Assembly (NCBI GenBank): GCA_002269645.1
Contig: NIVC01003031.1
Span: 1-64,000, forward strand
DNA length: 64,000 nucleotides
Reading direction: 5' to 3'
From: Macrostomum lignano
Lineage: Eukaryota
Made by a program: the position numbers and the translations under genes. Below, one piece after another: positions 1 through 17,151 of the stretch; positions within the stretch are counted from its first letter, which is position 1; every line of letters begins with the position of its first letter. The notes under the pieces are model-generated. The model was not told the origin of the DNA. It worked only from the letters and a program-made list of their open reading frames with translations, and did no database searches.

Positions 1-876
1 TGTCCCCCTGCTACGCAAATTCTACGAGCCGCACGCCCTGCTGGCCAATGCCAACAGAACCCGCCTATTGCAGACCCTGCTGGCCGGCCTGGAGCACTGC
101 GACCTGTCCTGCGTGTCCTGGGCCACCGTCACCTTCTTGGACGTCGCGCTGTCAGGACCGGCCCGCGCGCGATCGGCACCGCGGCGACACGAGTCCGGCT
201 CGTCTGGCTCACTCTCCGCTCTGCCTGACCCAGCCGAGGCCAACAGCCATCCGCAGGCGTCGTCAACTGGCTCCTCTCAGGATCAACAGCCGCCGTCATC
301 GTCTCGATCTTCGTCAACAATGCCTCCGACTGACGAGCGCAGCGGACGAGCCGCCGCAGCAGCAGGACCTGTCGTCCGATTTCAACAGCATCGCGATGTC
401 GCAGGAAGACAGTCTGGTGTGTTGAGCGCAAGCTGACGCATCGCCAGAAAACAGCAGCAGGCAGCCAACGGTGGCTCGTCATCCAACTATTATCGGCTGG
501 CGCTGGCGGACTCCGACGACGATGCCGACTGTTTTCCCGTTGCCGCTGGCCTGCTAGCCGACAATCACAACCAGCTGCAGCGGCTCGATAGCGATGAACC
601 TGACAGCTTACCTGACAGCCAACCTGACAGCCAACCTGCGCCCCCTGCTGCTGCTGAGCCTGTCAAACTGAATGGCGATGTTCGATCGTCCAGAAATCGG
701 CAACAACAGCAGCGACATCCTCGACCGTCTCTTCCGCTGCCAATGTCGATGCCGTTGTCCATGTCGGCGGCGGCGGCGTCGGGCAACCAACTCTCGCGGT
801 CCGGCCAGCAGCAGCCGCCAGTTTGGCCAGGTCGCTGGCCGACGAACTACAAGAGGCCGAAGCGGCTTTGCGAGCT

Positions 877-1075
877 GATGAGGATGAGGATGCTGATGCG
901 GATGCGGATGCTGATGCGGATGCAGATGCGGATGCTGATGTGTACACATATTCAGATGAAGCGAATGCCTATACGGATGCAGATGCGGATTCGGATGCGG
1001 ATGCGGATGCGGATGCGGATGCAGCCAGTGCCAAAGCTAAAACGGATGCTGACACTGACGCTGATGAATCTTTGT
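877..1075 (+). repeat. (GATGCG)n-type hexamer repeat encoding an Asp-Ala acidic tract
   Basis: Degenerate GATGCG/GATGCT repeats; frame 1 reads DEDEDADADAD...DADTDADES. Confidence 0.85.
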
Positions 1076-1403
1076 CGGACGATTCAGTGACATCAGATGC
1101 CGCCAAATCCTTTTGAACGGCGGCTCTCTCTAGCGACTACGCGTTGCCGTTGCGTCAGGTTCAGGACACGTTGGGCGATGCGACACTCAGCGCAGCTTAT
1201 AGAGCTCTGTGGTGGCGAGGCGACGCCTGGCGGCCTGCCTGCTGTGCCTGTCGCCTGGCCGGGTTAGACTGGTGTCTTCCGGTTCTCTGTCCAGGTGCGG
1301 AGTCTGCTTCTGTCACCTTTGTTTTCATTGTTGATTGTTAACAGTTTTTACCGTGTAATCAACTTGTAGTACATTTGGGACTGTAGGATTTCAAGGAGGT
1401 GGT

Positions 1404-1586
1404 GGCAGGGGGATTCCGGAGGGTTGAGGACCTGGCAGCGGAGGAATCGGAGGGTTGAGGGCCTGGCCAGCGGGGGATTCCGGAGGGTTGAGGGCCTGGC
1501 AGCGGGGGATTCCGGAGGGTTGAGGGTCTGGCAGCGGGGGATTCCGGAGGGTTGAGGGCCTGGCAGCGGAGGATTCCGGAGGGTTG
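1404..1586. repeat. ~32-33-bp minisatellite in an intron of the PLEKHM2-like gene
   Basis: About 5-6 copies of GGCAGCGGGGGATTCCGGAGGGTTGAGGGCCT. Confidence 0.9.
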
Positions 1587-2394
1587 CGTGTCAGTATTAC
1601 TCTAAATATTACAGCAGTAGATCACGCGATAACTCGCATACTCTACTAAAAGTAGTAGAATTCCATCCGCATTAACGCAGGCTGTGCGAATGGCGGCCGG
1701 ATTCGCTCGATCACGTGTGCCAGAGCGTCCAGGGCCACCTGCTTCACCTGGTCGGCGTGGTCCGCTCCGCCCGCCATTTTTGTCGCCTGCGTCGACCAGT
1801 CGATCGGCGAATCGGCGACCCGCGACTTGCGCCGCTGCCTGCCAACTGTGCCGCTGTTCCGCGCTCGCCCTGCCAAGACGTCGGCCTGGGCAAATGGCTG
1901 CGCGCGAGGCGTCCAATTTGTCTGGCGCGCCGATGCACTACGCGCTAACTACGCACGAGGTGCTGCTCGACGCCCGGCTGCCTGTGCGGCCGCCGCGCGG
2001 CGATTGGAGTCGCCGACGACTGCTACTTCCGGCGGCTGGCTGCTGGCGCGCTCCGGGCGACGGCGGGCCGCAGTGGTCGCTGGCCGGCTGTCGGGGATGC
2101 TGCCTGGTTCAGGACGCCGACAATGGCACGTAGTGGAGGTGACGCTGGCGGCCGCGTGACACCGTCATGATCGGCGGCCAGAGCTCTGTCACTTGGAAAC
2201 AGGCAATTTGCACCGCTCTGGTGCGCGGCGGCGCTGGCGGCAGCGGCAGCGGCGCCACTTCAAAGATTCTGACGCTGTTGGTTACTGAGCATGGCCTCGC
2301 TCTGGGCGCGAGCTGCCGCGGGTCTGGACGGTGAGTGCAGCTCTTGGGCGCGGATCTGCGGCTCCTGTGAAGTAGCATTTGAGCTGTACGTATT

Positions 2395-2694
2395 ATAGTG
2401 GCTTTCTATAGCTGTAGTTGAGCTGCAATCTGAGCATTCTATAGCTGTAGTGAGCTGCAATCTGAGCATTCTATAGCTGTAGTTGAGCTGCAATCTGAGC
2501 ATTCTATAGCTGTAGTAGTTGAGCTGCAATCTGAGCATTCTATAGCTGTAGTTGAGCTGCAATCTGAGCATTCTATAGCTGTAGTAGTTGAGCTGCAATC
2601 TGAGCATTCTATAGCTGTAGTTGGGCTGCAATCTGAGCATTCTATAGCTGCAGTTGAGCTGCAATCTGAGCATTCTATAGCTGTAGTTGAGCTG
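2395..2694. repeat. 33-bp minisatellite in the last intron of the PLEKHM2-like gene
   Basis: About 9 copies of TCTATAGCTGTAGTTGAGCTGCAATCTGAGCAT, some with an extra GTA. Confidence 0.95.
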
Positions 2695-2973
2695 TTTCTC
2701 ATTCTAAACTTCCAGGTAGAAACGGTCGATCTAGTCACTTTAGACGAGATCCGCAGTATTGGCTACGATCCGCACTACCCCACTTATCTGACCCTGCGGC
2801 TGCGCCCTCCCACCACCTGGCTGATCTGCCTGGGCTCCGCCGAGGAGCGGAACCGGCTGGGCCGCCTGCTGCGCCACCTGCTGCCCCGGCTGCCGCTGCG
2901 CCGCCTGCCGCCAGGTCGGGCCGGCGGACTTCGCGCCTCAGCCAGGGCGCTGACGCTGCTGTGCGAACAGACT

Positions 2974-3358
2974 CTGCCCTGACCTGGCGTGACCCCCGAG
3001 AGTAGAGCCTGTGCTGCCCTGACCTGGCGTGACCCGAGAGTAGAGTCTGTGCTGCCCTGACCTGGCGTAACCCCGAGAGTAGAGCCTGTGCTGCCCTGAC
3101 CTGGCGTGACCCGAGAGTAGAGCCTGTGCTGCCCTGACCTGGCGTGACCCCCCAGAGTAGAGCCTGTGCTGCCCTGACCTGGCGTGACCCCCAGAGTAGA
3201 GCCTGTGCTGCCCTGACCTGGCGTGACCCCGAGAGTAGAGCCTGTGCTGCCCTGACCTGGCGTGACCCGAGAGTAGAGCCTGTGCTGCCCTGACCTGGCG
3301 TGACCCCGAGAGTAGAGCCTGTGCTGCCCTGACCTGGCGTGACCCCCCCCAGAGTAGT
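2974..3358. repeat. ~39-bp minisatellite starting at the PLEKHM2-like stop codon
   Basis: About 10 copies of CTGCCCTGACCTGGCGTGACCCC(n)GAGAGTAGAGCCTGTG. Confidence 0.95.
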
Positions 3359-3959
3359 CTGTGTTGGACGATTCCTGACGTGACCTGCCTTGACCTTCGC
3401 GGTAGCTCTGCTATTGTCCTTTGGCGGTCTTTATTATCTGTGTGACTCGACTTAGTACGAGATTCAGAGAACCGTATGAGCCATACCTATTTCATTGACA
3501 TGGCCTACTCTCTGGGTCAACAAGGGAACCCCGATCTCACCAGAGTCATACTGCCTATTAATCAAACAATTTCAACTGTCATAATGCATGTACTGTACAG
3601 GCTTCAGTTCTATTATTATGGTAACTAATTATGACTAGGCTGTTATTAATTAAACTAAAGTTCAGCAGCCCATACTTTGATGTTAATCTTGTTCGTTCAC
3701 TCCCAGACGTGTACAGTGAGGCTTACGAATATGTATGTATGTAGCTTTAATTTCTTCAGTCTCTTTCATACAGGCCCTTGCCAAACTTAATTTGTTTTTT
3801 CTTCTGTGCATCAAATCATTTTGCCTGAGTCTGTACCACGCTGTGTGGTTTAGTTCGGCCAAATATGCTGTTTGCCTGTGTGTCTGCCTTTTATTGCCTT
3901 CAATTTTACCGGTTTCGTTAATTGGAGACTTTGTTTTGGCATCTGGCTTGCTCGGCATG

Positions 3960-4046
3960 CCTGTCTCGTTCTGGCCTGTCTCCCATTGTGTCTGTCTCAC
4001 TGTCTGTCTGTCTGTCTGCCTGTTTGTCTGTGTCTGCCTGTCTTAG

Positions 4047-4141
<95 letters not shown>

Positions 4142-4152
4142 GTCTGTCTGTC

Positions 4153-4236
<84 letters not shown>
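3960..4236. repeat. (TGTC)n microsatellite
   Basis: Near-perfect TGTC run at about 4046-4235 with a degenerate 5' part. Confidence 0.95.
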
Positions 4237-4237
<1 letters not shown>

Positions 4238-4789
4238 TTTCAGTTCAGTCCATCTCCACAAGCTGCCGTGGCCCGTAGCTGGCAGTCGAACTCCAGTACA
4301 AATATATTAATACTTTAGAATTACTAAAAAGTATTAACCGGCTCGAGCGCATCTATTTTAATCAATAATGCATCAATCGAACAAGCAGATTCACCGCTGA
4401 TTTCTTGGAGTGCGTTTCTACATGCGCGCTCTGTAAAGTTCAGTTATTCAGCATTGGCTCAGTCCGTTTTATAACCAGATAATCGCCTGGATTTTCCCCG
4501 ATTTTACTCGTAGTAAGCTTCTGAAACAATGTGTAGAGAAACTGTAGATTTGCTCTAATTATTTTGTTCATTTATTCTGTAATATTTTTTTCTGTTTGTG
4601 TACCTCAATTATAAAATCGTGTGTTTGGATGTGTTGTGGCTGGTAAAGATAGCATAATGATTGTAAAATACACACCGCCATTGACAAGGGAATATTCGTG
4701 TTTTTATTCCTTTTTATTTAGCTTAATTTTAAAGGTATTTCAGCAAGTTAGTGTTTAGGTCCATCGGCCCTTCATAATTTCCATCGCCT

Positions 4790-5350
4790 CCTCTTTAATT
4801 CCATCAGCCTGTCGTTAGGTCCATCAGCCTGTCGTTAGGTCCATCAGCCTGTCGTTTGGTCCATCAGCCTGTCGTTTGGTCCATCAGCCTGTCGTTTGGT
4901 CCATCAGCCTGTCGTTTGGTCCATCAGCCTGTCGTTTGGTCCATCAGCCTGTCGTTTGGTCCATCAGCCTGTCGTTAGGTCCATCAGCCTGTCGTTTGGT
5001 CCATCAGCCTGTCGTTTGGTCCATCAGCCTGTCGTTTGGTCCATCAGCCTGTCGTTAGGTCCATCAGCCTGTCGTTAGGTCCATCAGCCTGTCGTTGGGT
5101 CCATCAGCCTGTCGTTGGGTCCATCAGCCTGTCGTTAGGTCCATCAGCCTGTCGTTTGGTCCATCAGCCTGTCGTTAGGTCCATCAGCCTGTCGTTGGGT
5201 CCATCAGCCTGTCGTTGGGTCCATCAGCCTGTCGTTAGGTCCATCAGCCCGTTTTTAGGTCCATCAGCCCGTTTTTAGGTCCATCAGCCCGTTTTTAGGT
5301 CCATCAGCCGTTTTTAGGTCCATCAGCCCGTCTTTAGGTCCATCAGGCTG
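4790..5350. repeat. 20-bp minisatellite
   Basis: About 27 copies of GGTCCATCAGCCTGTCGTT(A/T/G). Confidence 0.95.
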
Positions 5351-5485
5351 TCGTTAGGCAATATGCGTCCTTAGTTCCATGAGTATTTTTAGGTCCATGT
5401 ATTACCTGTTATGCTATAACTAAAGAATACCTGCTATAAGTGTTCATATTACGTATTCCAATCGCTGAAAAACCCAATCCTTCAG

Positions 5486-6996
5486 TTACCGCGTCGGCTC
5501 CTCTCGTGGCGCCGCTTTTGCTGGCGCCGTCAGCTCGCCAGCACGGCCGGACCCGAGACCAACAATTCCAATGGAACTGGCGGCCCTGCAACAGTGAAAA
5601 CTGCCAGCGAATACCTGCAGCACCTGGGCCCGCTGAGCGAGACCCTGGTAACCTCGGACGCTTGGCTGCACAGGGCTATTTACACCGGGGTGCAGTTCAA
5701 ATTGCGCTACTATCTCAGCCCGGTGCCGGCTAAGAAGCACCAGTCTCAGCACGCGCTGTTCCTCCTGTTGGCGCCGTTTGGGCGCGGCTACTCGGAGGTT
5801 GAGACTCTCGGCCGCTATCTGGAGGAGGCCGGCCAACGGGTGCTGCTGCCGCTCTGGCCGGGTCTGGGCTCGCCCGGACACTCGGCTAAGGATGAGCGGG
5901 TGAGTCTGCTGGTGATTAGTAGTATGAGTCAATTGAGTAGTCATTGTCAATCGGTTAAGTATTCAGTAGTATGAGTCAATTGAGTAGTCATTGTCAATCG
6001 GTTAAGTATAATATTCAGTACTATGAGTCTATTCAGTAGTCAGTCAGTATAAATCGAGATAGTAGTCAGTAGTATAAATCGAATGAGTAGTCAGTAGTAT
6101 AAATCAAGGGTATAGTCAGTAGTATGGATCGAATGAGTAGTCAGTAGTATGAATCGAATAAGTAGTCAGTAGTATAAAAATCGAGGAAATGAAACAGTCA
6201 GTAGTATGAATCGAGCATCAACTGAGCACCTCACTAATCCTCGCAGGTATTCTCCTACTCGGCAGCTGAGAACTCCATCCTGCTGTGCCGGCTGCTCAGA
6301 AACCGCGCTCTCAGATCCATGCCCAACCGGCCCGTGCTAGTTGTGGCCTCCGGTCAGGCCTGCTGGCCAGCCGTTGCTATGGCAACCCTGGCACCGGAGC
6401 TGCTATCTGGCGCGGTGCTGACGGCTCCCAGCGACCCGGACCCGCTGCAGAAATGGTCGGCGCTGCGGCTACTGGCCGACTTAACCGCCGGCCTGTGGTC
6501 TCACTCTGTGCTGCGCGTCCTGCCGGCCGCCGCCATCGCCGCCTGCAGCCCGCTCGTCAACTGGCCGCCACTGATTGGCCGGCAGTGGCTGCGGCTCCGA
6601 GCCTATCACCTGCTGGGCCTGCGCCACCGCGACTCCGACAACGGCCGCTCGCTGGCCGTGGCGATGCGCTGCTCGCCGATGCACCTGACCGCCTTGGCCA
6701 AGGACAGTCGGCGGCTGCAGCTCCTGCTGTCCGAGGAGCCAATCGAATGGAGCGGCTCGGCTCTTCAACTGCTGCCGGCTAAGCGGCTCTCCGTGTCGGG
6801 CTGGCCTTATCCGGTCGGTTGCTATGGCAACGATAATGCCGATTATAGGCAGTTTGCCGACTATCTGGTCAGGATGGCCGGCTATTGCGCCAGATCTGCG
6901 GCGGTAACTTCGGTCGCCAACACGGGCAACCTGCTGGACAGGGCCGGCAGCCTCGCCTCCGAGTCGGCTGCCAGGCGACGGACTGCCGCTGTTTAG
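5486..6996 (+). CDS. Alpha/beta-hydrolase-fold (ABHD-like) protein with a degenerate nucleophile motif; start codon not present in the first visible exon
   Basis: Exons 5486-5899 (after TTCAG; donor GTGAGT at 5900) and 6247-6996 (after CGCAG) join in frame, phase 0. Motifs RVLLPLWPGLGSPGHS (compare D-x-x-G-H-G-x-S) and VLVVASGQACWPAVAMATLAPELLSGAVLTAP (compare LVGHSxGxxxAxxxAxxxPxxVxxxVL) fit the fold. Stop TAG at 6994-6996. Confidence 0.65.
5918..6210. repeat. Degenerate tandem repeats in the ABHD-like intron
   Basis: A duplicated ~51-bp unit (AGTAGTATGAGTCAATTGAGTAGTCATTGTCAATCGGTTAAGTA...) followed by about 7 copies of a ~27-bp GTAGTCAGTAGTAT(A/G)AATCGA unit. Confidence 0.8.
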
Positions 6997-7069
6997 TTTG
7001 CGATTTTGTTAACTCTTTGTCTGATACTGGCGCGTGAAAATGTACCTGCCGGGTCCACAGTTGAATATC

Positions 7070-7075
7070 AATAAA
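7070..7075 (+). promoter_or_regulatory. Putative polyadenylation signal of the ABHD-like gene
   Basis: AATAAA about 75 nt downstream of the stop codon. Confidence 0.5.
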
Positions 7076-7804
7076 GCTATAAGAAAGGCACAACAGATCA
7101 AAAGATAAACATTGGGTCTGCCTCATATCGAAAGCAATAACAATTTTATGCTAAAAAAATAAAAACTCCCTATCTCCGTTGTGTTTTTATCGGTAAAACC
7201 TGCTTCCTAAAATTTTCTAAGAAACGAAGTTTCCCGCCCTACTTGAGTAGTCCTTGAGTCCACTTTTATAGTCCTCAGGCTAGACCAATAGTCCCCTTTC
7301 ATGGTCCTCAGTCTTGATCAACAATCCCCTGTTATGGGCCTAAACTTCTACTACAAGTTCCCTACCATAGGCGTAACATTTTAACCTCTTTGAATGCTAG
7401 TGAATTGGTTTAGTTAGTGATTTTCATGTTTTCTGAACTTTTAGTACTATTTCTTATTTGTTAGTTGAAGTTTGTTATTCTCTTCATATTGCTCAACGCA
7501 TGCTGAGAATAAAGCCTCTTTCTGAACGCATTTCTACTGCCACTTGATTTTAAGATGTAATTGTATTCATGTAAAAAATGTACTGCAAATCGGTAGTGCA
7601 TGGATGCCGGGTGCTTTTGTTTAATTTTATTTATTTTGCGTTTTTTCAGGTGGTAAATAACTTTCATGTCTGAACTCTTACAAAGCTTTATTTCTCCTTC
7701 CTAATCCTAAGTTCCCGCCTAACTGACCGTGTACATATCCTAGGCCCCATATAGCTATCAGCCTTATTAATTCAAGTTCAATTTCTTTACCCTTAATTCC
7801 CCGG

Positions 7805-8275
7805 GCCCCACCTCACTCGGTGCCCTGCAGCCAGACTGGCCGTTTTCACACTCTATATCAGCCTTATCTCTCCACTCTACGCCTTCGAGGCCCCCACCTC
7901 ACTCGCTGCCCCTGCAGACAGACTGGCGGTATTCACACCCCATATAATTGGCAGCCTTATCTCTCCACTCTACCCCTTCGAGGCCCCACCTCACTCTCTG
8001 CCCCTGCAGACAGACTGGCCGTATTCACACCCCATATAATTGGCAGCCTTATCTCTCCACTCTACCCCTTCGAGGCCCCACCTCACTCTCTGCCCCTGCA
8101 GACAGACTGGCCGTATTCACACCCCATATAATTGGCAGCCTTATCTCTCCACTCTACCCCTTCGAGGCCCCACCTCACTCTCTGCCCCTGCAGACAGACT
8201 GGCCGTATTCACACCCCATATGATTGGCAGCCTTATCTCTCATCCCTATGCCTTCCAGCCCCCTTCACTCTGCGC
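7805..8275. repeat. 92-bp minisatellite between the convergent ABHD-like and DNAAF11 3' ends
   Basis: About 5 copies, 92-bp period (GGCCCCACCTCACTCTCTGCCCCTGCAGACAGACTGGCCGTATTCACACCCCATATAATTGGCAGCC...), followed by (CCAGA)n. Confidence 0.95.
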
Positions 8276-8724
8276 CGCTGCAGCCAGACCAGACCAGACC
8301 AGACCAGAATGTTGCTGAATGTATATGTAATGTATATATTTATCCAAAAAGTGGTCAATTAGTTCATAGGAAACATTGTGGAAGAGCCAAAAGCAGGCAG
8401 TTAAATTATCTTAAAAGCAATTGACGCTGAAAGGAATTATTGTTTCTCTATTTTGTAAGCAACAAATCAACTAAATTAAAATGGACGGCTAGGTGTGTAT
8501 TATCAAGTAAGTACATGTATATACGCTTGTACATGCAATTGGTATGAAATAAAGTTAAGCACAGTGACAAAATGCGCCAAATAATGCGGTAAAATACAAG
8601 TTTATTATTAATAAAACACTCAGAATGTTAAAGTAAAGTTTTGCTTGTTAAAGCAAAACTTTTTTCGATCATATCGGCAAAATGTGTCAGCTACGGGTAC
8701 ATGCATAATGAAAATACGAGTAGG

Positions 8725-11700
8725 TCAGATCAGCGGCGGCACGTCGGGATCGTCAACAAAACCCGGCGAATTCGGCCGCTCAACGGCGGTCTTCGCTGTT
8801 GACCGGCCAGCAAAGCCGCCGCCGTTTTTGCCGCCGCTGACCTTGTCGGCTTCTGGCGGCACCACACGGAGGTCGACGACGCCTCGCCTGCTGGATTCGT
8901 CGACTTCCAAGTAGGCGTGGCGCGGCTGCGACTCCGTTTTCGTTGTCGGCGGAACGGCGGCTGCCGGTTTGGCTACAGCCGCCGATGCCGCCGATTTTCG
9001 CAGCGGCTCTCCATGCGCCTTCGGCATGGTGACCAGTAGGTGGCCGGTGGTGGCTGAGCGTAGGGCCGAGGATTCGTCGGTGCGGACCTCGCCAGCAAGG
9101 CCAGTTGAAGCAGGCGGCCTTTGACGGTGACGCGGATGTACTGGGGCTGCACATCGCAGTCGATCAAGCTGGTGTCCATGTGCCTGCGGCGGGCAGGGAG
9201 AATTCTCTGAACATTCTAGTAATTCCCCGACTGTCCGAATCTAGTAATTCCCCGACTGTCCGAATCTAGTATTCCCGACTGTTCGAATCTAGTAATTCCC
9301 GACTGACCGAATCGAGTAATTCCCCGACTGTCCGAATCTAGTATTCCTCGACTGTCTGAATCGAGTAATTCCCCGACTGTCCGAATCGAGTAATTCCCCG
9401 ACTGTCCGAATCTAGTATTCCCCGACTGTCCGAATCGAGTAATTCCCCGACTGTCCGAATCGAGTAATTCCCCGACTGTCCGAATCTAGTAATTCCCCGA
9501 CTGTCCGAATCTAGTAATTCCCGACTGTCCGAATCTAGTAATTCCCCGACTGTCCGAATCTAGTAATTCCCCGACTGTCCGAATCTAGTAATTCCCGACT
9601 GTCCGAATCTAGTAATTCCCCGACTGTCCGAATCTAGTAATTCCCCGACTGTCCGAATCTAGTATTCCCCGACTGTTCGAATCTAGTAATTCCCCGACTG
9701 TTCGAATCTAGTAATTCCCCGACTGTCCGAATCGAGTAATTCCCCGACTGTCCGAATCTAGTATTCCTCGACTGTCTGAATCGAGTAATTCCCCGACTGT
9801 CCGAATCGAGTAATTCCCCGACTGTCCGAATCGAGCAATTCCCCGACTGTCCGAATCGAGTAATTCCCCGACTGTCCGAATCTAGTATTCCCCGGCTGTC
9901 CGAATCGAGTAATTCCCCGACTGTCTGAATCGAGTAATTCCCCGACTGTCCGAATCGAGTAATTCCCCGACTGTCCGAATCTAGTATTCCCCGACTGTCC
10001 GAATCGAGTAATTCCCCGACTGTCCGAATCGAGTAATTCCCCGACTGTCCGAATCTAGTATTTCCCGACTGTCCGAATCGAGTAATTCCCCGACTGTCCG
10101 AGTCTAGTAATTTCCCGACTGTCCGAATCGAGTAATTCCCCGACTGTCCGAATCGAGTAATTCCCCGACTGTCCGAATCTAGTAATTCCCCGACTGTCCG
10201 AATCTAGTAATTCCCCGACTGTCCGAATCTAGTATTTCCCGACTGTCCGAATCGAGTAATTCCCCGACTGTCCGAGTCTAGTAATTCCCCGACTGTCCGA
10301 ATCGAGTAATTCCCCGACTGTCCGAATCGAGTAATTCCCCGACTGTCCGAATCTATTAACTTCAAAAAGTTCTAATTTCACAATAAATTCCCTTGCATGT
10401 ACTTTCCGGATCTCCGGAGCCTCCCAGCCTCACTCACTTGAACACCGCGACGTCCAGAATATAGGCATTGTTCTCTTCATCGTCAGTGAGTGTGAAGTCG
10501 AGTCTGCAGTCCAGTAGGAGCTGGTTGGCTTGTGACAATGATTTTAAAGTAAGCCGAGCAATCAATTTTTGGCACGACTCACTTTGACTCGTTTATATTG
10601 TAGGGTCGGCCGTCCGGGAAAAACAGCGGGTGCTGCTTCGGGGCCGGTTTTTCGCTGCGGGGGCATCGATGGGGGAGGCTGGCTAAATTTATCCTGACAG
10701 GCAGACAGACAGGCAAGGCAGAGCAGTTCATGCCAGCTCAACTCACGGCTCGGGATTCTCGCGCCGCCGCTTCTCCTGCATAAATTCGTGCGTCTCAATG
10801 CGCGATTCGGGCGTGTAGGGCACCTTCTCCTGCATGAACCTGCGGGTGAATCAGACTGCGATCTGCCAGTGCCTCTGCCATCATCCCCAATCTGCCAGTG
10901 CCTCACTGCCATCATCCCCAATCTGCCAGTGCCTCACTGCCATCATCCCCAATCTGCCAGTGCCTCACTGCCATCATCCCCAATCTGCCAGTGCCTCACT
11001 GCCATCATCCCCAATCTGCCAGTGCCTCACTGCCATCATCCCCAATCTGCCAGTGCCTCACTGCCATCATCCCCAATCTGCCAGTGCCTCACTGCCATCA
11101 TCCCCAATCTGCCAGTGCCTCACTGCCATCATCCCCAATCTGCCAGTGCCTCACTGCCATCATCCCCAATCTGCCAGTGCCTCACTGCCATCATCCCCAA
11201 TCTGCCAGTGCCTCACTGCCATCATCCCCAATCTGCCAGTGCCTCACTGCCAGTGCCTCACTGCCATCATCCCCAATCTGCCAGTGCCTCACTGCCAGTG
11301 CCTCACTGCCATCATCCCCAATCTGCCAGTGCCTCACTGCCATCATCCCCAATCTGCCAGTGCCTCACTGCCATCAACCCCAATCTGCCAGTGCCTCACT
11401 GCCAGTGCCTCACTGCCATCATCCCCAATCTGCCAGTGCCTCACTGCCATCATCCCCAATCTGCCAGTGCCTCACTGCCATCATCCCCAATCTGCCAGTG
11501 CCTCACTGCCATCATCCCCAATCTGCCAGTGCCTCACTGCCATCATCCCCAATCTGCCAGTGCCTCACTGCCAGTGCCTCACTGCCATCATCCCCAATCT
11601 GCCAGTGCCTCACTGCCATCATCCCCAATCTGCCAGTGCCTCACTGCCATCATCCCCAATCTGCCAGTGCCTCACTGCCATCATCCCCAATCTGCCAGTG

Positions 11701-14652
11701 CCTCACTGCCATCATCCCCAATCTGCCAGTGCCTCACTGCCAGTGCCTCACTGCCATCATCCCCAATCTGCCAGTGCCTCACTGCCAGTGCCTCACTGCC
11801 ATCATCCCCAATCTGCCAGTGCCTCACTGCCATCATCCCCAATCTGCCAGTGCCTCACTGCCATCAACCCCAATCTGCCAGTGCCTCACTGCCAGTGCCT
11901 CACTGCCATCATCCCCAATCTGCCAGTGCCTCACTGCCATCATCCCCAATCTGCCAGTGCCTCACTGCCATCATCCCAATCTGCCAGTGCCTCACTGCCA
12001 TCATCCCCAATCTGCCAGTGCCTCACTGCCATCATCCCCAATCTGCCAGTGCCTCACTGCCATCATCCCCAATCTGCCAGTGCCTCACTGCCAGTGCCTC
12101 ACTGCCATCATCCCCAATCTGCCAGTGCCTCACTGCCATCATCCCCAATCTGCCAGTGCCTCACTGCCATCATCCCCAATCTGCCAGTGCCTCACTGCCA
12201 TCATCCCCAATCTGCCAGTGCCTCACTGCCATCATCCCCAATCTGCCAGTGCCTCACTGCCATCATCCCCAATCTGCCAGTGCCTCACTGTTCATCCAGT
12301 CCGGCACCCGCAGCCTTCAGTTTTTCCCGTTCCCGCTGCCTCTCGGCCGCTTCCTGGCGTTCGACCTCCCGCTGTCTGGCCCAGTCCGCCTGCGCTTGAC
12401 GCGTGCGCTCGTAAATAAACGGGTAGTTCTGTGCGCGTGATGATGGGTGGCTGAGTTTTAGTTGATAAGAAAGATAGGAATTATTGTAAGAAACTGATAA
12501 AAAATAAAAAACGGGTGTACTTTTAGAGTCGTCTTGAATTGTACTTTAACGTCTACCTTGATTTGTACTTTAGTGTCTGCCTTGATTTTACTTTAGTATC
12601 TGCCTTGATTTTACTCTAGTGTCTGCCTTGACTTGTACTTTAGTGTCTGCCTTGACTTGTACTTTAGTGTCTGCCTTGATTTTACTTTAGTATCTGCCTT
12701 GATTTTACTCTAGTGTCTGCCTTGACTTGTACTTTAGTGTCTGCCTTGACTTGTACTTTAGTGTCTGCCTTGATTTTACTTTAGTATCTGCCTTGATTTT
12801 ACTCTAGTGTCTGCCTTGACTTGTACTTTAGTGTCTGCCTTGATTTTACTTTAGTATCTGCCTTGATTTTACTCTAGTGTCTGCCTTGACTTGTACTTTA
12901 GTGTCTGCCTTGACTTGTACTTTAGTGTCTGCCTTGACTTGTACTTTAGTGTCTGCCTTGATTTTACTTTAGTATCTGCCTTGATTTTACTCTAGTGTCT
13001 GCCTTGACTTGTACTTTAGTGTCTGCCTTGATTTTACTTTAGTATCTGCCTTGATTTTACTCTAGTGTCTGCCTTGACTTGTACTTTTGTGTCTGCCTTG
13101 ACTTGTTCTTTAGTGTCTGCCTCGACTTGTACTTTAGTTTCTGCCTTGATTTGTACCCTAGTGTGTACCTTGATTTTTACTTTATTGTCTACATTTTTTG
13201 TACTTTAGTGCCAGTTATAGTTGTACATTTAGCGGCTACTGCACTAAGATTTGCACTTTAATGTCGACCTTAAATTTGCTTTTTGCGTCTATTTGACTTA
13301 CAAAGCGTCCACTAAAACCTTAGCATTAGAATTATACTTGTACTTTAGCAATGAACTAGATTTTTTAACGTCATTTAGAATTGTACTACTTAGGTTCCAA
13401 TCAAATTCGTACTTCAATAAAGAGTCACCTGTTCAGCTTTGATTCGCTCGGACCGGCTGATCTCTTCTCCATCAAGGTACTGAAAGAGGAAAGAGAAGAC
13501 TTCTTAATTTCGAAGGGAGCATCAAATTCTCAGAAGAGATCAGATGGTCAAACCTTGAGCTGCGGCAACGTGCAGATAACAAAATCTCTGTAGGATTCGA
13601 ACTGGGCGCAAGGATTCCAGTGAGGTAGAGCTCCCTAAGGTTCACCAGGCCTGTCAGGCTGGCCAAGGACAGAATATCTCCGATGAAGTTCACCGTCAGG
13701 TCGAGCTTCGCCAGAGACTCGCAGCCTTCGAGATTCTCCACTCGCTCAATGTTGTTTAGCGCCAAGTTCAAGTATTCGAGTTTCTTTAGCCGGCCAACAT
13801 TCTCTGCGTGCGGATACGGCGGGTTTGGGGTGTCAACATGTAAATAAGCTGGCCCAAGAACGCGCCAGAATTGGTTTGAGGGAGGTGGCGCCAGAACTGG
13901 TTTGAGGGAGGTGGCGCCAGAACTGGTTTGAGGGAGGTGGCGCCAGAACTGGTTTGAGGGAGGTGGCGCCAGAACTGGTTTGAGGGAGGTGGCGCCAGAA
14001 CTGGTTTGAGGGAGGTGGCGCCAGAACTGGTTTGAGGGAGGTGGCGCCAGAACTGGTTTGAGGGAGGTGGCGCCAGAACTGGTTTGAGGGAGGTGGCGCC
14101 AGAACTGGTTTGAGGGAGGTGGCGCCAGAACTGGTTTGAGGGAGGTGGCGCCAGAACTGGTTTGAGGGAGGTGGCGCCAGAACTGGTTTGAGGGAGGTGG
14201 CGCCAGAACTCCCTCTTTTTAATTGCACCCCACTTGAAGAAAATAGTGGCACCTCTGAATGTAAAATAAAAATCAGATTTTAATTAGGATCTTCAAACTC
14301 ACCAATTTTGCCAATCAGGTTGCTCTGCAAGTATAGAATTTTCAGATCTCTGCACCACTTGTCCAAGTGTTCGATTCTGTCAATAGAAAATATAATTAGG
14401 TTAAAAATTTGAAAATCTAATTGATAAATTAACAAGCAAATATTTGAGCTCACTTTTCAATATCTTGCTGATGCAGAGACAGCTCTTCCAAAGTGCTGAT
14501 CTGGCACTCATTGTGTTCAGCTCTTCGCCGAACTAGATCTTCTGTAACTGAAGTGATTGAGGGTAAGAGCACTGATATTGCAGCATTAAGATGGGTTTCT
14601 TCCACATTTTACAACAATATGCATTTCTTCAAATATACTTACTTTGTACCAT
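8725..14652 (-). CDS. DNAAF11: Dynein axonemal assembly factor 11 (LRRC6/tilB homologue); two apparent 1-bp deletions
   Basis: Ten GT-AG exons: 14643-14652 (ATG GTA CAA A), 14454-14547, 14303-14376, 13554-13803, 13429-13479, 12289-12428, 10747-10839, 10583-10678, 10438-10503, 8725-9183. Translation [62 protein letters not shown]...YTPESRIET...[21 protein letters not shown]...DDPDVPPLI* closely follows LRRC6. Frame must shift at about 13616 (restores TGNPC) and about 9091 (restores [13 protein letters not shown]). Confidence 0.93.
9215..10356. repeat. 25-bp minisatellite, DNAAF11 intron 9
   Basis: About 45 copies of GTAATTCCCCGACTGTCCGAATC(T/G)A. Confidence 0.95.
10860..12290. repeat. 31-bp minisatellite containing the 5' splice site, DNAAF11 intron 6
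   Basis: GCCAGTGCCTCACTGCCATCATCCCCAATCT with interspersed shorter sub-units; the minus strand contains CA|GTGAGGCA in each unit. Confidence 0.97.
12545..13195. repeat. 23-24-bp minisatellite with higher-order structure, DNAAF11 intron 5
   Basis: Variants GTGTCTGCCTTGACTTGTACTTTA, GTGTCTGCCTTGATTTTACTTTA and GTATCTGCCTTGATTTTACTCTA recur in fixed order. Confidence 0.92.
13866..14210. repeat. 26-bp minisatellite, DNAAF11 intron 3
   Basis: About 13 near-identical copies of GGCGCCAGAACTGGTTTGAGGGAGGT. Confidence 0.97.
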
Positions 14653-16258
14653 GTGAAACAGTTTATTAAGCACACTGAAATATAGAATATATGTAGGGTT
14701 AATTAGTATGTTAAATTTTTTAGTTTAGTCAAAAACCTAAAAATTTAAAATATATGATATATTCCCTTCGATCAGCTTTACAATAAAAATATACATCTAT
14801 TCTCTATTTTTAAAAATATAAAAGTGATGAAGGCCCTGTCAAATTTGATTTTAATTAGAAGCCTTTAATATAAAACACTGGCTGATTTGTTAGTAGTGAC
14901 TATCTATCACTTAGATATTTAAAATATTAGAAGTTAGAAGAACTAGTAATATTAATATTATTATAATACATAAATATAAAATGCAATAAAAATAAAGTAT
15001 ACACTTAATATATAAAATTAAGAGCTATGAGATGATGCAGTTGTTGGACTTAAAAATTGAATTAAAAAATTTATATCCGATCCGACCAACTTAATTGTCT
15101 TTGCCTCGCCTAGCCAGTAGTCTCGTGACTCTAGTCGATTTGAAAGGAATGTAATGACTCATGACTCTATGACATTCATCGCGGCAATTACCAAAAGAGA
15201 CTCAAATATTTTTATTTATTCTATACTGAAAATATTCTTATGTTTTAAAAAGTGTAAAATCACATAAAAATAAAATAAATACTCTCTAAAGTAAGGTTAA
15301 CCTTGAAAAAAAACTATGTCGCCGCAGTCAACTTAAACTCCCGCCCAGTTGTGGATTTAATGACTTTTTTGTTTTGCACAATCATTTGTATTAATTCTTA
15401 GATTGCTCAGACCTTTTGTAAATAATTAGGTCACATTTATAGTTCTATAATTTTTTACTTTTTTTAAAAAACAATACGTTAATTTTATTTTATTTCTATA
15501 AAATGCACACTTTTGAATTCAGCTTGACAAACGGATCGGCACAGTTCACTTGGACTACTCAAGAAGAAGGACGGGAAGCTTGGAAACTTTAGAAATTTCC
15601 AAATGGTTTTCTTCGAAAAAAATACACTAAGTAAATATGAAGTTTGTATTTTTCAGCACAAAAATATCATTGCTTTCGATAGGAGGCAGACCAGATGTCT
15701 TTGGGATGCTGTGCTTTTCTCATAGTAGCTCCATTACATGATAGTCATGAAGCTATTCGTTTAGAAAGTTAGGATTCTATGTTAATTTTTTATTCTACGC
15801 ACATCCCCTGTACCTAGAGATCATAGAACCTGACTCTTTTGATCTTCTACGACTAAATCCTTGCCCAAGTCTTGGGCTGAAAATCTTAACTTTTAAACGC
15901 ATGCACGTTTTCGTTAAAACAAACATTTCTTAACGCACTACATGTAAAGCTATGAAATAATTTTTCAAGACACATCCACATAAAGGGCAGGCAGTTTATG
16001 ATTCCATGAAGCAGCACTGAACTGCTGCAGCTCCAATACACACCAGATCCAGTTGTGCAAATATGCGGCGGAACAACGCTGTGCTGCCAACTGTCGCGTG
16101 TCTATTTCGATTCCAAAATTGCTATGCCTGCGCGTCACCCCTCACACGTTTCATGCATCTTGGCTTTCCCAGATAACACATCCCAAACTCAGCTGCTGCC
16201 GCTGCGTCAGGGCCCCAACCTTCGGTTTGTACTTTTGCCTTAGCTGCCTCTATGCTGG

Positions 16259-17151
<893 letters not shown>

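What the first reader, a model, noticed from the sequence alone, without database searches (positions are those of the whole stretch)
5417..5560. ABHD-like first exon lacks ATG; an SL-donated AUG would give an Arg-rich, mitochondrial-presequence-like N-terminus
Seen: acceptor TTCAG ends at 5485; the exon starts in phase 0 with TTA CCG CGT CGG; there is an in-frame TAA at 5417-5419 and no in-frame ATG until 6319. Established: flatworm spliced leaders end in AUG, which can act as the initiator (shown in Schistosoma). Inference: SL addition gives M-LPRRLLSWRRFCWRRQLASTA, rich in Arg with no acidic residues, like a mitochondrial targeting peptide.
Basis: partly seen in the sequence, partly recalled or inferred. 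Interest (0 to 1): 0.7.

Follow-up and report, generated by a model that had tools for sequence, protein, structure and literature searches.

The report
Spliced-leader start codon, flatworm hydrolase-like gene
This Macrostomum lignano (flatworm) gene has no start codon of its own and almost certainly borrows the AUG at the end of the trans-spliced leader, a mechanism already known in flatworms; the idea that its arginine-rich start sends the protein to mitochondria is possible but only weakly supported.

Summary
The sequence facts are all correct. CTTCAG ends at 5485, the exon starts TTACCGCGTCGG in phase 0, TAA lies in frame at 5417-5419, and the first in-frame ATG is at 6319 (codon 163).

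The window is Macrostomum lignano contig NIVC01003031.1:1-64000. The gene is BOX15_Mlig005851g3 (PAA53740.1), deposited as a 5'-partial CDS that starts exactly at 5486.

- **Spliced leader:** the single M. lignano SL ends in ...TTGCATG, and its published acceptor motif [T/C]TNCAG matches CTTCAG here.
- **Why the SL AUG is needed:** it is in frame. The first genomic ATG lies inside the alpha/beta-hydrolase-like core and is Leu in the only orthologue found.
- **What is missing:** SL-containing reads could not be reached, so trans-splicing at this site is inferred from the annotation boundary, not seen.
- **Mitochondrial presequence:** weak. There are 6 Arg, no acidic residue in 24 residues and an RQL|AS motif. 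But amphipathicity is no better than in shuffles, and 7.6% of DNA shuffles give the same composition.
- **"ABHD-like":** only sub-threshold similarity, with the nucleophile and oxyanion motifs replaced.

This is an ordinary new example of a known flatworm mechanism (Cheng et al. 2006). Interest is low.

The parts
5480..5485 (+). Probable SL trans-splice acceptor, CTTCAG
   Evidence: It matches the published M. lignano trans-acceptor motif [T/C]TNCAG (PMC8629364). The deposited CDS of Mlig005851g3 starts at the next base. It is conserved in copy g2; copy g1 has ATTCAG.
5417..5419 (+). In-frame TAA in the outron, which closes the frame upstream of the acceptor
   Evidence: The stop is identical in all three gene copies.
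5486..5899 (+). Exon 1 (138 codons, phase 0 at both ends), with no in-frame ATG
   Evidence: The CDS start is annotated at 5486. Codon-position GC3 is 0.76-0.79 throughout.
5486..5557 (+). Arg-rich N-terminal segment, LPRRLLSWRRFCWRRQLASTAGPE, preceded by the SL-encoded Met; a possible targeting peptide
   Evidence: 6 Arg, no Asp or Glu before residue 25, and an RQL|AS R-3-type motif. Amphipathicity is not above shuffles.
5900..6246 (+). Intron 1 (GTGAGT...CGCAG), made largely of 47-bp and 25-bp tandem repeats
   Evidence: The intron is 691 nt in copy g1.
6247..6996 (+). Exon 2, running to the TAG stop; contains the conserved ASGQACWP motif
6319..6321 (+). First in-frame genomic ATG (codon 163); not a plausible initiator
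   Evidence: It lies inside the region aligned to alpha/beta hydrolases (residues 77-237). The orthologue has Leu at this position.
4800..5358 (+). 20-bp tandem repeat (28 copies) in the presumed outron, 127 nt upstream of the acceptor
   Evidence: It is present in all three copies with unit variants.

Best explanation
The gene is Mlig005851 of Macrostomum lignano. Its pre-mRNA is trans-spliced at CTTCAG|TTACCG (5485|5486) to the 35-nt spliced leader CGGTCTCTTACTGCGAAGACTCAATTTATTGCATG. The last three bases of the leader then sit directly in front of TTA CCG, in phase 0, and act as the initiator. This gives a 388-aa protein, MLPRRLLSW..., translated from a 32-nt leader. The unspliced transcript cannot encode this protein, because the frame is closed by TAA at 5417 and exon 1 has no in-frame AUG. 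Expression therefore depends on trans-splicing. The product is a lineage-restricted, probably non-catalytic alpha/beta-hydrolase-like protein. Its Arg-rich, acid-free first ~20 residues may be a mitochondrial matrix-targeting peptide. Shown here: the sequence anatomy, the organism, the SL sequence (from the literature) and the deposited gene boundary. Inferred: trans-splicing at this site, initiation at the SL AUG, and, much more weakly, the targeting function.
For: Locus L002, from NIVC01003031.1:1-16996, is identical to window 1-16996, and its annotated 387-aa 'partial' CDS starts at 5486. All three genomic copies (g1, g2, g3) are deposited as 5'-partial and start 0, 3 or 6 nt after the acceptor; none has an upstream exon. 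The annotation pipeline (TBONE) sets 5' gene ends at peaks of SL-containing reads after trimming the SL (PMC5730564). The SL ends in ATG, and the trans-acceptor motif is [T/C]TNCAG (PMC8629364). The SL AUG is in frame, with no stop, for 388 codons. The first genomic in-frame ATG is codon 163. Weak hydrolase alignments start at about residue 77-84, and codon 163 is Leu in the orthologue L004, whose ORF continues upstream of it. The two neighbouring genes have their own ATG within 8-19 codons of the model start, so this gene is the exception. SL-AUG initiation is established in Schistosoma (Cheng et al. 2006, as quoted in PMC9851317) and inferred in Echinococcus, including for mRNAs of mitochondrial proteins (PMC3510090). 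Wiberg et al. 2023 call the final ATG of the Macrostomum SL a likely start codon.
Against: No SL-joined read or cDNA for this gene could be inspected. The gene id is absent from the searchable text and the held supplements. The deposited starts of the three copies differ by 0, 3 and 6 nt although the DNA is identical, so the boundaries carry some noise. The 'partial' flag is not specific, since both neighbouring genes carry ORFs extended to the transcript end as well. The 2.5 kb upstream is repeat-rich, where RNA-seq mapping is poor and an upstream exon could be missed. One phase-compatible ATG...GTGAGG mini-exon exists at 3680-3715. For the targeting peptide: the hydrophobic moment is not above residue shuffles (70% of shuffles are equal or higher), and 7.6% of dinucleotide shuffles give at least 6 basic and no acidic residues.
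Confidence: 0.75

Rival explanations
1. An unannotated upstream exon, cis-spliced to the 5485 acceptor, supplies the ATG, either always or in an alternative isoform. This could include an exon shared with the 862-aa gene upstream on the same strand.
For: The upstream gene is on the same strand and its CDS ends at 2982. The interval 2983-5485 is rich in tandem repeats that hamper read mapping. One phase-0 candidate with a consensus donor exists, ATG 3680...3715|GTGAGG.
Against: None of the three deposited RNA-seq-based models has such an exon. The candidate is a 12-codon AT-rich stretch just after a likely poly(A) signal of the upstream gene (ATTAAA at 3649), and nothing supports it. The acceptor fits the trans-splice motif.
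Confidence: 0.1
2. The mRNA starts at 5486, but translation begins downstream, either at a near-cognate codon in exon 1 or at ATG 6319. The Arg-rich stretch would then be untranslated leader, and its composition would simply reflect CG-rich DNA.
For: Arg-rich, acid-free translations arise in 7.6% of dinucleotide shuffles of the segment. The SL AUG has a weak context, U at -3 and U at +4 (SL sequence).
Against: The SL AUG is the first AUG and the only one opening the long ORF. The next AUG (5571) opens a 9-codon out-of-frame ORF. Starting at 6319 would remove about half of the hydrolase-like core, and that Met is Leu in the orthologue. GC3 of codons 1-25 (0.79) equals that of the rest of the CDS. 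SL-AUG initiation is documented in flatworms.
Confidence: 0.08
3. The locus is a decaying or non-functional gene copy, so the missing ATG has no functional meaning.
For: No homologue was found outside Macrostomum-like sequences among 1.84 billion representatives. The catalytic motifs are lost. Between copies g3 and g1 there are 5 nonsynonymous and 5 synonymous differences.
Against: All three copies keep an intact 387-codon ORF and splice sites. An orthologue at 52% identity keeps the ORF and motifs such as ASGQACWP, GLRHR-SDN and GWP-P-GC. The gene passed the expression-based annotation filters.
Confidence: 0.05

Closest known systems
Flatworm mRNAs that use the 3'-terminal AUG of the spliced leader as initiator (Cheng, Cohen, Ndegwa & Davis 2006, J Biol Chem 281:733; Schistosoma. 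Also Echinococcus granulosus, PMC3510090)
   Same: The SL ends in AUG. The acceptor lies directly before an ORF in phase 0. There is no usable genomic AUG near the 5' end. The SL AUG is needed to encode the N-terminal part of the protein.
   Different: This case is in a free-living, early-branching flatworm (Macrostomorpha), where use of the SL AUG has only been remarked on in passing (PMC10468722). Here it is inferred from the annotation and the sequence, not shown by cDNA or translation assays. The distance to the first genomic AUG is unusually long, at 162 codons.
slORFs, open reading frames created by SL addition (slORFfinder, PMC9851317)
   Same: The start codon is supplied in trans by the leader.
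   Different: That work used ribosome footprints in nematodes, trypanosomes and Oikopleura. No such data exist here.
Alpha/beta-hydrolase fold proteins (Pfam Abhydrolase_1; Est30-type carboxylesterases such as PDB 1tqh and 9jux; thioesterase domain 3qit)
   Same: There is weak local similarity over residues 77-237, in the order of the core strand, helix and nucleophile-elbow region.
   Different: All scores are below significance. HGF is replaced by APF and G-H-S-M-G by A-S-G-Q-A. No relatives exist outside the lineage. The fold could not be confirmed (AlphaFold pLDDT 35).
Mitochondrial matrix-targeting presequences with an R-3 MPP cleavage site
   Same: The N-terminus is Arg-rich and acid-free, about 18-24 residues long, has an R-X-L|A-S motif and is followed by a low-complexity linker.
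   Different: Amphipathicity is not above shuffles, no predictor or experiment was available, and the composition is partly explained by CG-rich DNA.

Membership tests
SL-AUG-initiated flatworm mRNA | The organism has an SL RNA whose leader exon ends in AUG | tested here: met
   The organism was identified as M. lignano. The SL, CGGTCTCTTACTGCGAAGACTCAATTTATTGCATG, is followed by the donor GTAAG (PMC8629364). No SL RNA gene lies in this window.
SL-AUG-initiated flatworm mRNA | The mRNA is trans-spliced at an acceptor immediately 5' of the ORF | tested here: inconclusive
   The evidence is indirect. The deposited CDS starts at 5486, right after CTTCAG, and the pipeline places 5' ends at SL-read peaks. 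No reads could be inspected, and the starts of the other two copies are offset by 3 and 6 nt.
SL-AUG-initiated flatworm mRNA | The SL AUG is in frame with the main ORF, with no intervening stop | tested here: met
   ATG followed by 5486... reads through 388 codons.
SL-AUG-initiated flatworm mRNA | No alternative in-frame AUG that would preserve the conserved protein | tested here: met
   The first ATG is codon 163, inside the hydrolase-like core, and is Leu in the orthologue.
SL-AUG-initiated flatworm mRNA | Initiation at the SL AUG demonstrated | not testable with these tools
   This needs Ribo-seq, N-terminal proteomics or reporter assays.
Alpha/beta hydrolase (ABHD-type) | Significant match to an alpha/beta-hydrolase profile | tested here: not met
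   Pfam Abhydrolase_1 scores 14.1 bits against a cut-off of 25.8, E = 0.039. PDB hits have E = 0.026 to 3.
Alpha/beta hydrolase (ABHD-type) | Nucleophile elbow G-X-S-X-G and HG oxyanion motif | tested here: not met
   GHSMG aligns to ASGQA. HGFTG aligns to APFGR. ASGQACWP is conserved in the orthologue.
Alpha/beta hydrolase (ABHD-type) | Alpha/beta-hydrolase three-dimensional fold | tested here: inconclusive
   The single-sequence AlphaFold2 model has mean pLDDT 34.9 and is unusable.
Mitochondrial matrix-targeting presequence | N-terminal 15-50 residues rich in Arg and lacking acidic residues | tested here: met
   There are 6 Arg and no Asp or Glu in residues 1-24. However, 7.6% of dinucleotide shuffles of the DNA do as well.
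Mitochondrial matrix-targeting presequence | Amphipathic helix | tested here: inconclusive
   The maximum hydrophobic moment is 0.29 (18-residue window) or 0.56 (14-residue window). With the 18-residue window, 70% of residue shuffles reach the observed value.
Mitochondrial matrix-targeting presequence | MPP cleavage motif; import shown or predicted by trained tools | not testable with these tools
   An R-3-type motif, R16-Q-L|A-S, is present, but the motif is degenerate. TargetP, MitoFates and import assays were not available.

The most novel reading that the evidence does not exclude
A Macrostomum-specific, catalytically dead alpha/beta-hydrolase-like protein depends entirely on SL trans-splicing both for its start codon and for exposing a mitochondrial targeting peptide. 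Trans-splicing would then act as an on/off gate for making an organelle-directed protein. This would also be a clean, testable case of obligate SL-AUG use in the earliest-branching flatworm model that has transgenesis.
Probability: 0.3. Interest if true: 0.35.

Novelty: new member of a known kind. Interest (0 to 1): 0.25.

Why it matters
It explains why this gene, and probably many other M. lignano genes, is deposited as '5'-partial'. The SL, including its ATG, was trimmed before ORF calling, so the true N-terminal Met is missing from the database entries. Restoring the SL AUG in M. lignano gene models would correct N-termini and therefore predictions of signal and targeting peptides. As biology it adds one example to a mechanism known since 2006, and it extends that mechanism with an unusually clear case (162 codons without any genomic AUG) to a basal free-living flatworm in which reporter transgenesis could test it directly.

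Tried and rejected
- **SL RNA gene in the window:** none, even allowing 3 mismatches. Rfam at gathering thresholds also found nothing.
- **Comparative test of the 5' exon:** a word-based search of 5.8 billion proteins and a full HMMER search of 1.84 billion representatives found only the gene's own copies, two frame-shifted old models and one orthologue fragment covering the C-terminal half. Acceptor conservation across species could therefore not be tested.
- **The three M. lignano copies:** they are almost identical and carry little information.
- **Gene id in papers and supplements:** no occurrence.
- **The 'partial' flag as proof of SL-AUG use:** rejected, because both neighbouring genes are also extended to their 5' ends yet have their own ATGs.
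- **Signal peptide reading of the N-terminus:** rejected by inspection. No uncharged hydrophobic run is longer than 4 residues within the first 17.
- **Schistosoma phytochelatin synthase as a precedent for an SL-dependent mitochondrial isoform:** rejected, since that mRNA is not trans-spliced.

Full report
**Observation**

- CTTCAG occupies 5480-5485, and the next bases are TTA CCG CGT CGG.
- TAA at 5417-5419 is in frame. An in-frame ATG at 5411 runs straight into that stop.
- Exon 1 (5486-5899) ends in phase 0 at a GTGAGT donor. The intron is 5900-6246. Exon 2 (6247-6996) ends in TAG.
- The joined frame is open for 387 codons, and its first ATG is at 6319 (codon 163).
- The only other ATGs in exon 1 (5571, 5892) are out of frame. 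The ATG at 5571 opens a 9-codon ORF.

**Identity of the locus**

The conceptual protein matches, at 100% identity, NCBI proteins named 'hypothetical protein BOX15_Mlig005851g1/g2/g3, partial [Macrostomum lignano]'.

Fetching their contigs showed that locus L002 (NIVC01003031.1:1-16996) is identical to window 1-16996. The window is therefore the start of that contig of assembly Mlig_3_7 (GCA_002269645.1).

In L002 the deposited CDS of copy g3 (PAA53740.1, 387 aa, beginning LPRR) runs 5486-6996.

Copies g2 and g1 lie on two other contigs. Their DNA across the acceptor and exon 1 is nearly identical, and the g2 CDS is identical to g3. Both are also deposited as 5'-partial, starting 3 and 6 nt further in.

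**What is known about this organism**

- M. lignano has a single 35-nt spliced leader, CGGTCTCTTACTGCGAAGACTCAATTTATTGCATG, followed in the SL RNA gene by the donor GTAAG.
- About 30% of its genes are trans-spliced, and the top motif at trans-splice acceptors is [T/C]TNCAG, placed right at the junction (PMC8629364). CTTCAG at 5480-5485 fits this motif.
- The Mlig_3_7 annotation was built by trimming the SL from reads, mapping them, and cutting transcription units at the resulting SL peaks (TBONE). ORFs were then called with TransDecoder (PMC5730564).
- Because the SL, including its ATG, was trimmed away, an ORF that depends on the SL AUG would necessarily be deposited as 5'-partial and would start at the first base after the acceptor. 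That is what is seen here.
- Flatworm SLs characteristically end in AUG. This AUG was shown to act as initiator in Schistosoma (Cheng et al. 2006, as summarised in PMC9851317 and PMC12582326).
- The same use was inferred for many Echinococcus mRNAs, including mRNAs for mitochondrial proteins (PMC3510090).
- Wiberg et al. 2023 note that the final ATG of the Macrostomum SL is a likely start codon, and they deliberately left it on reads for that reason (PMC10468722).

**Why the SL AUG is needed here**

- The 'partial' flag alone proves little, because the two neighbouring genes are also deposited with ORFs extended to their 5' ends.
  - The DNAAF11/LRRC6-like gene on the minus strand starts 1 nt after a TTTCAG acceptor (14675-14680). 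It has its own ATG 7 codons in (14652-14650), and there the SL AUG would be out of frame (AUG UGU GCU UAA).
  - The 862-aa upstream gene has an ATG at codon 19.
- The gene under study is different: there is no in-frame ATG for 162 codons.
- Weak but mutually consistent alignments to alpha/beta hydrolases place the core from about residue 77 to 237.
  - Pfam Abhydrolase_1 covers residues 104-210.
  - PDB 3qit covers residues 115-237.
  - Est30-type carboxylesterases cover residues 77-129.
  - Starting at Met163 would therefore remove about half of the domain.
- The only orthologue found is a Logan contig from run SRR31628394 (L004), 52% identical. It has Leu where M. lignano has Met163, and its ORF continues upstream of that point.
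- With the SL attached, the first AUG of the mRNA is the SL AUG. It is in phase 0 and opens the whole 388-codon ORF.

**Alternatives**

- *A cis-spliced upstream exon* cannot be excluded without reads. The 2.5 kb between the upstream gene's stop (2982) and the acceptor is largely tandem repeats. However, none of the three deposited models has such an exon. A scan for ATG-initiated, stop-free segments ending in phase 0 at GT[AG]AG found only one candidate: a 12-codon AT-rich stretch at 3680-3715, just after a probable poly(A) signal of the upstream gene.
- *Downstream or non-AUG initiation* is disfavoured by the arguments above.
- *A dead gene* is disfavoured by intact ORFs in three copies and by a conserved orthologue. 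The count of 5 nonsynonymous to 5 synonymous differences between g3 and g1 is too small to say more.

**Operon question**

The upstream gene is on the same strand. From its likely poly(A) signal (ATTAAA at 3649) to the acceptor is about 1.8 kb, or about 1.0 kb after subtracting tandem repeats. That sits right at the 1-kb repeat-adjusted threshold used to call operons in M. lignano. Whether this gene is a downstream cistron is open. Either way, the start-codon argument is unchanged.

**The N-terminal peptide**

With the SL Met the protein begins MLPRRLLSWRRFCWRRQLASTAGPETNN.
- It has 6 Arg, no Lys, and no acidic residue until position 25.
- It contains an R-X-L|A-S (R-3 type) motif that would place cleavage after Leu18.
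- A low-complexity linker follows.

This fits a matrix-targeting presequence and does not fit a signal peptide, since there is no hydrophobic core. The support is thin, for three reasons.
- The helical hydrophobic moment is not higher than in shuffles of the same residues (70% of shuffles reach it).
- Translating dinucleotide-preserving shuffles of the same CG-rich 63 nt gives at least 6 basic and no acidic residues in 7.6% of trials.
- No trained predictor was available.

I put mitochondrial targeting at roughly one in three.

**The protein**

- No homologue exists beyond the lineage among 1.84 billion representatives.
- Similarity to alpha/beta hydrolases is below every curated threshold.
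- The positions of the oxyanion HG motif and of the G-X-S-X-G nucleophile elbow read APF and ASGQA. The latter is conserved as ASGQACWP in the orthologue.
- The single-sequence AlphaFold model was unusable (pLDDT 35).
- 'ABHD-like' is therefore at best a description of distant fold-level resemblance, and the protein is probably not an active serine hydrolase.

**Verdict**

The core interpretation, an SL-donated initiator, is well supported indirectly and is a known flatworm mechanism. The organelle-targeting addition is plausible but weak. This is a new example of a known kind. Its main practical value is for annotation: N-termini of M. lignano proteins that were trimmed of the SL ATG.

Noticed in passing
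window 14650-14680 (minus strand): The DNAAF11/LRRC6-like neighbour starts 1 nt after a TTTCAG acceptor. With the SL attached, the SL AUG would be out of frame and open a 3-codon mini-ORF (AUG UGU GCU UAA) just ahead of the gene's own ATG at 14652-14650. This is the contrasting 'SL AUG not used' situation within the same window.
   Followed up: partly
window 12317-14673 (minus strand), compared with L001 13241-18417 and L003 13521-18161: The same LRR/DNAAF11-like gene is modelled as 203 aa on this contig but as 443 aa on the two other copies. Large tandem arrays (25-bp units at 9215-10359, 31-bp units at 10861-12000+) lie where the missing 3' exons should be.
   Followed up: no
window 2974-3346: The stop codon of the upstream 862-aa gene (TGA at 2980-2982) sits in the first unit of a 39-bp tandem repeat (9.6 copies), and each unit repeats CTGCCCTGA. 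Array length changes could therefore alter that gene's C-terminus or 3'UTR.
   Followed up: no
window 5900-6246, compared with L003 10248-10938: Intron 1 of the gene consists mostly of 47-bp and 25-bp tandem repeats and is twice as long in copy g1 (691 nt against 347 nt).
   Followed up: partly
window 6340-6363 (residues 170-178): The motif ASGQACWP, at the position of the alpha/beta-hydrolase nucleophile elbow, is identical in the 52%-identical orthologue. APFG replaces the HG oxyanion motif at about residues 95-98. This suggests a conserved non-catalytic, or non-canonical, function.
   Followed up: partly
proteins P0002 and P0003 (UniRef A0A1I8FPM5 and A0A1I8FHQ1): Two UniProt entries from the older ML2 assembly are named 'Exostosin domain-containing protein' and 'Pecanex-like protein'. 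They are frame-shifting translations of copies of this same gene that read through the acceptor (NPIIQLPRR...). The names look wrong.
   Followed up: no
window 5531-5533: A second CAG inside exon 1 (GTCAG|CTCGCC) would also put the SL AUG in frame, giving M-LASTAGPE... without the Arg-rich segment. It does not fit the YTNCAG motif, and no model starts there.
   Followed up: no
window 3989-4235 and 4800-5358: A (TGTC)n microsatellite of about 63 units and a 20-bp repeat of 28 units fill much of the presumed outron. The 20-bp array is shared by all three gene copies, with different unit variants.
   Followed up: partly
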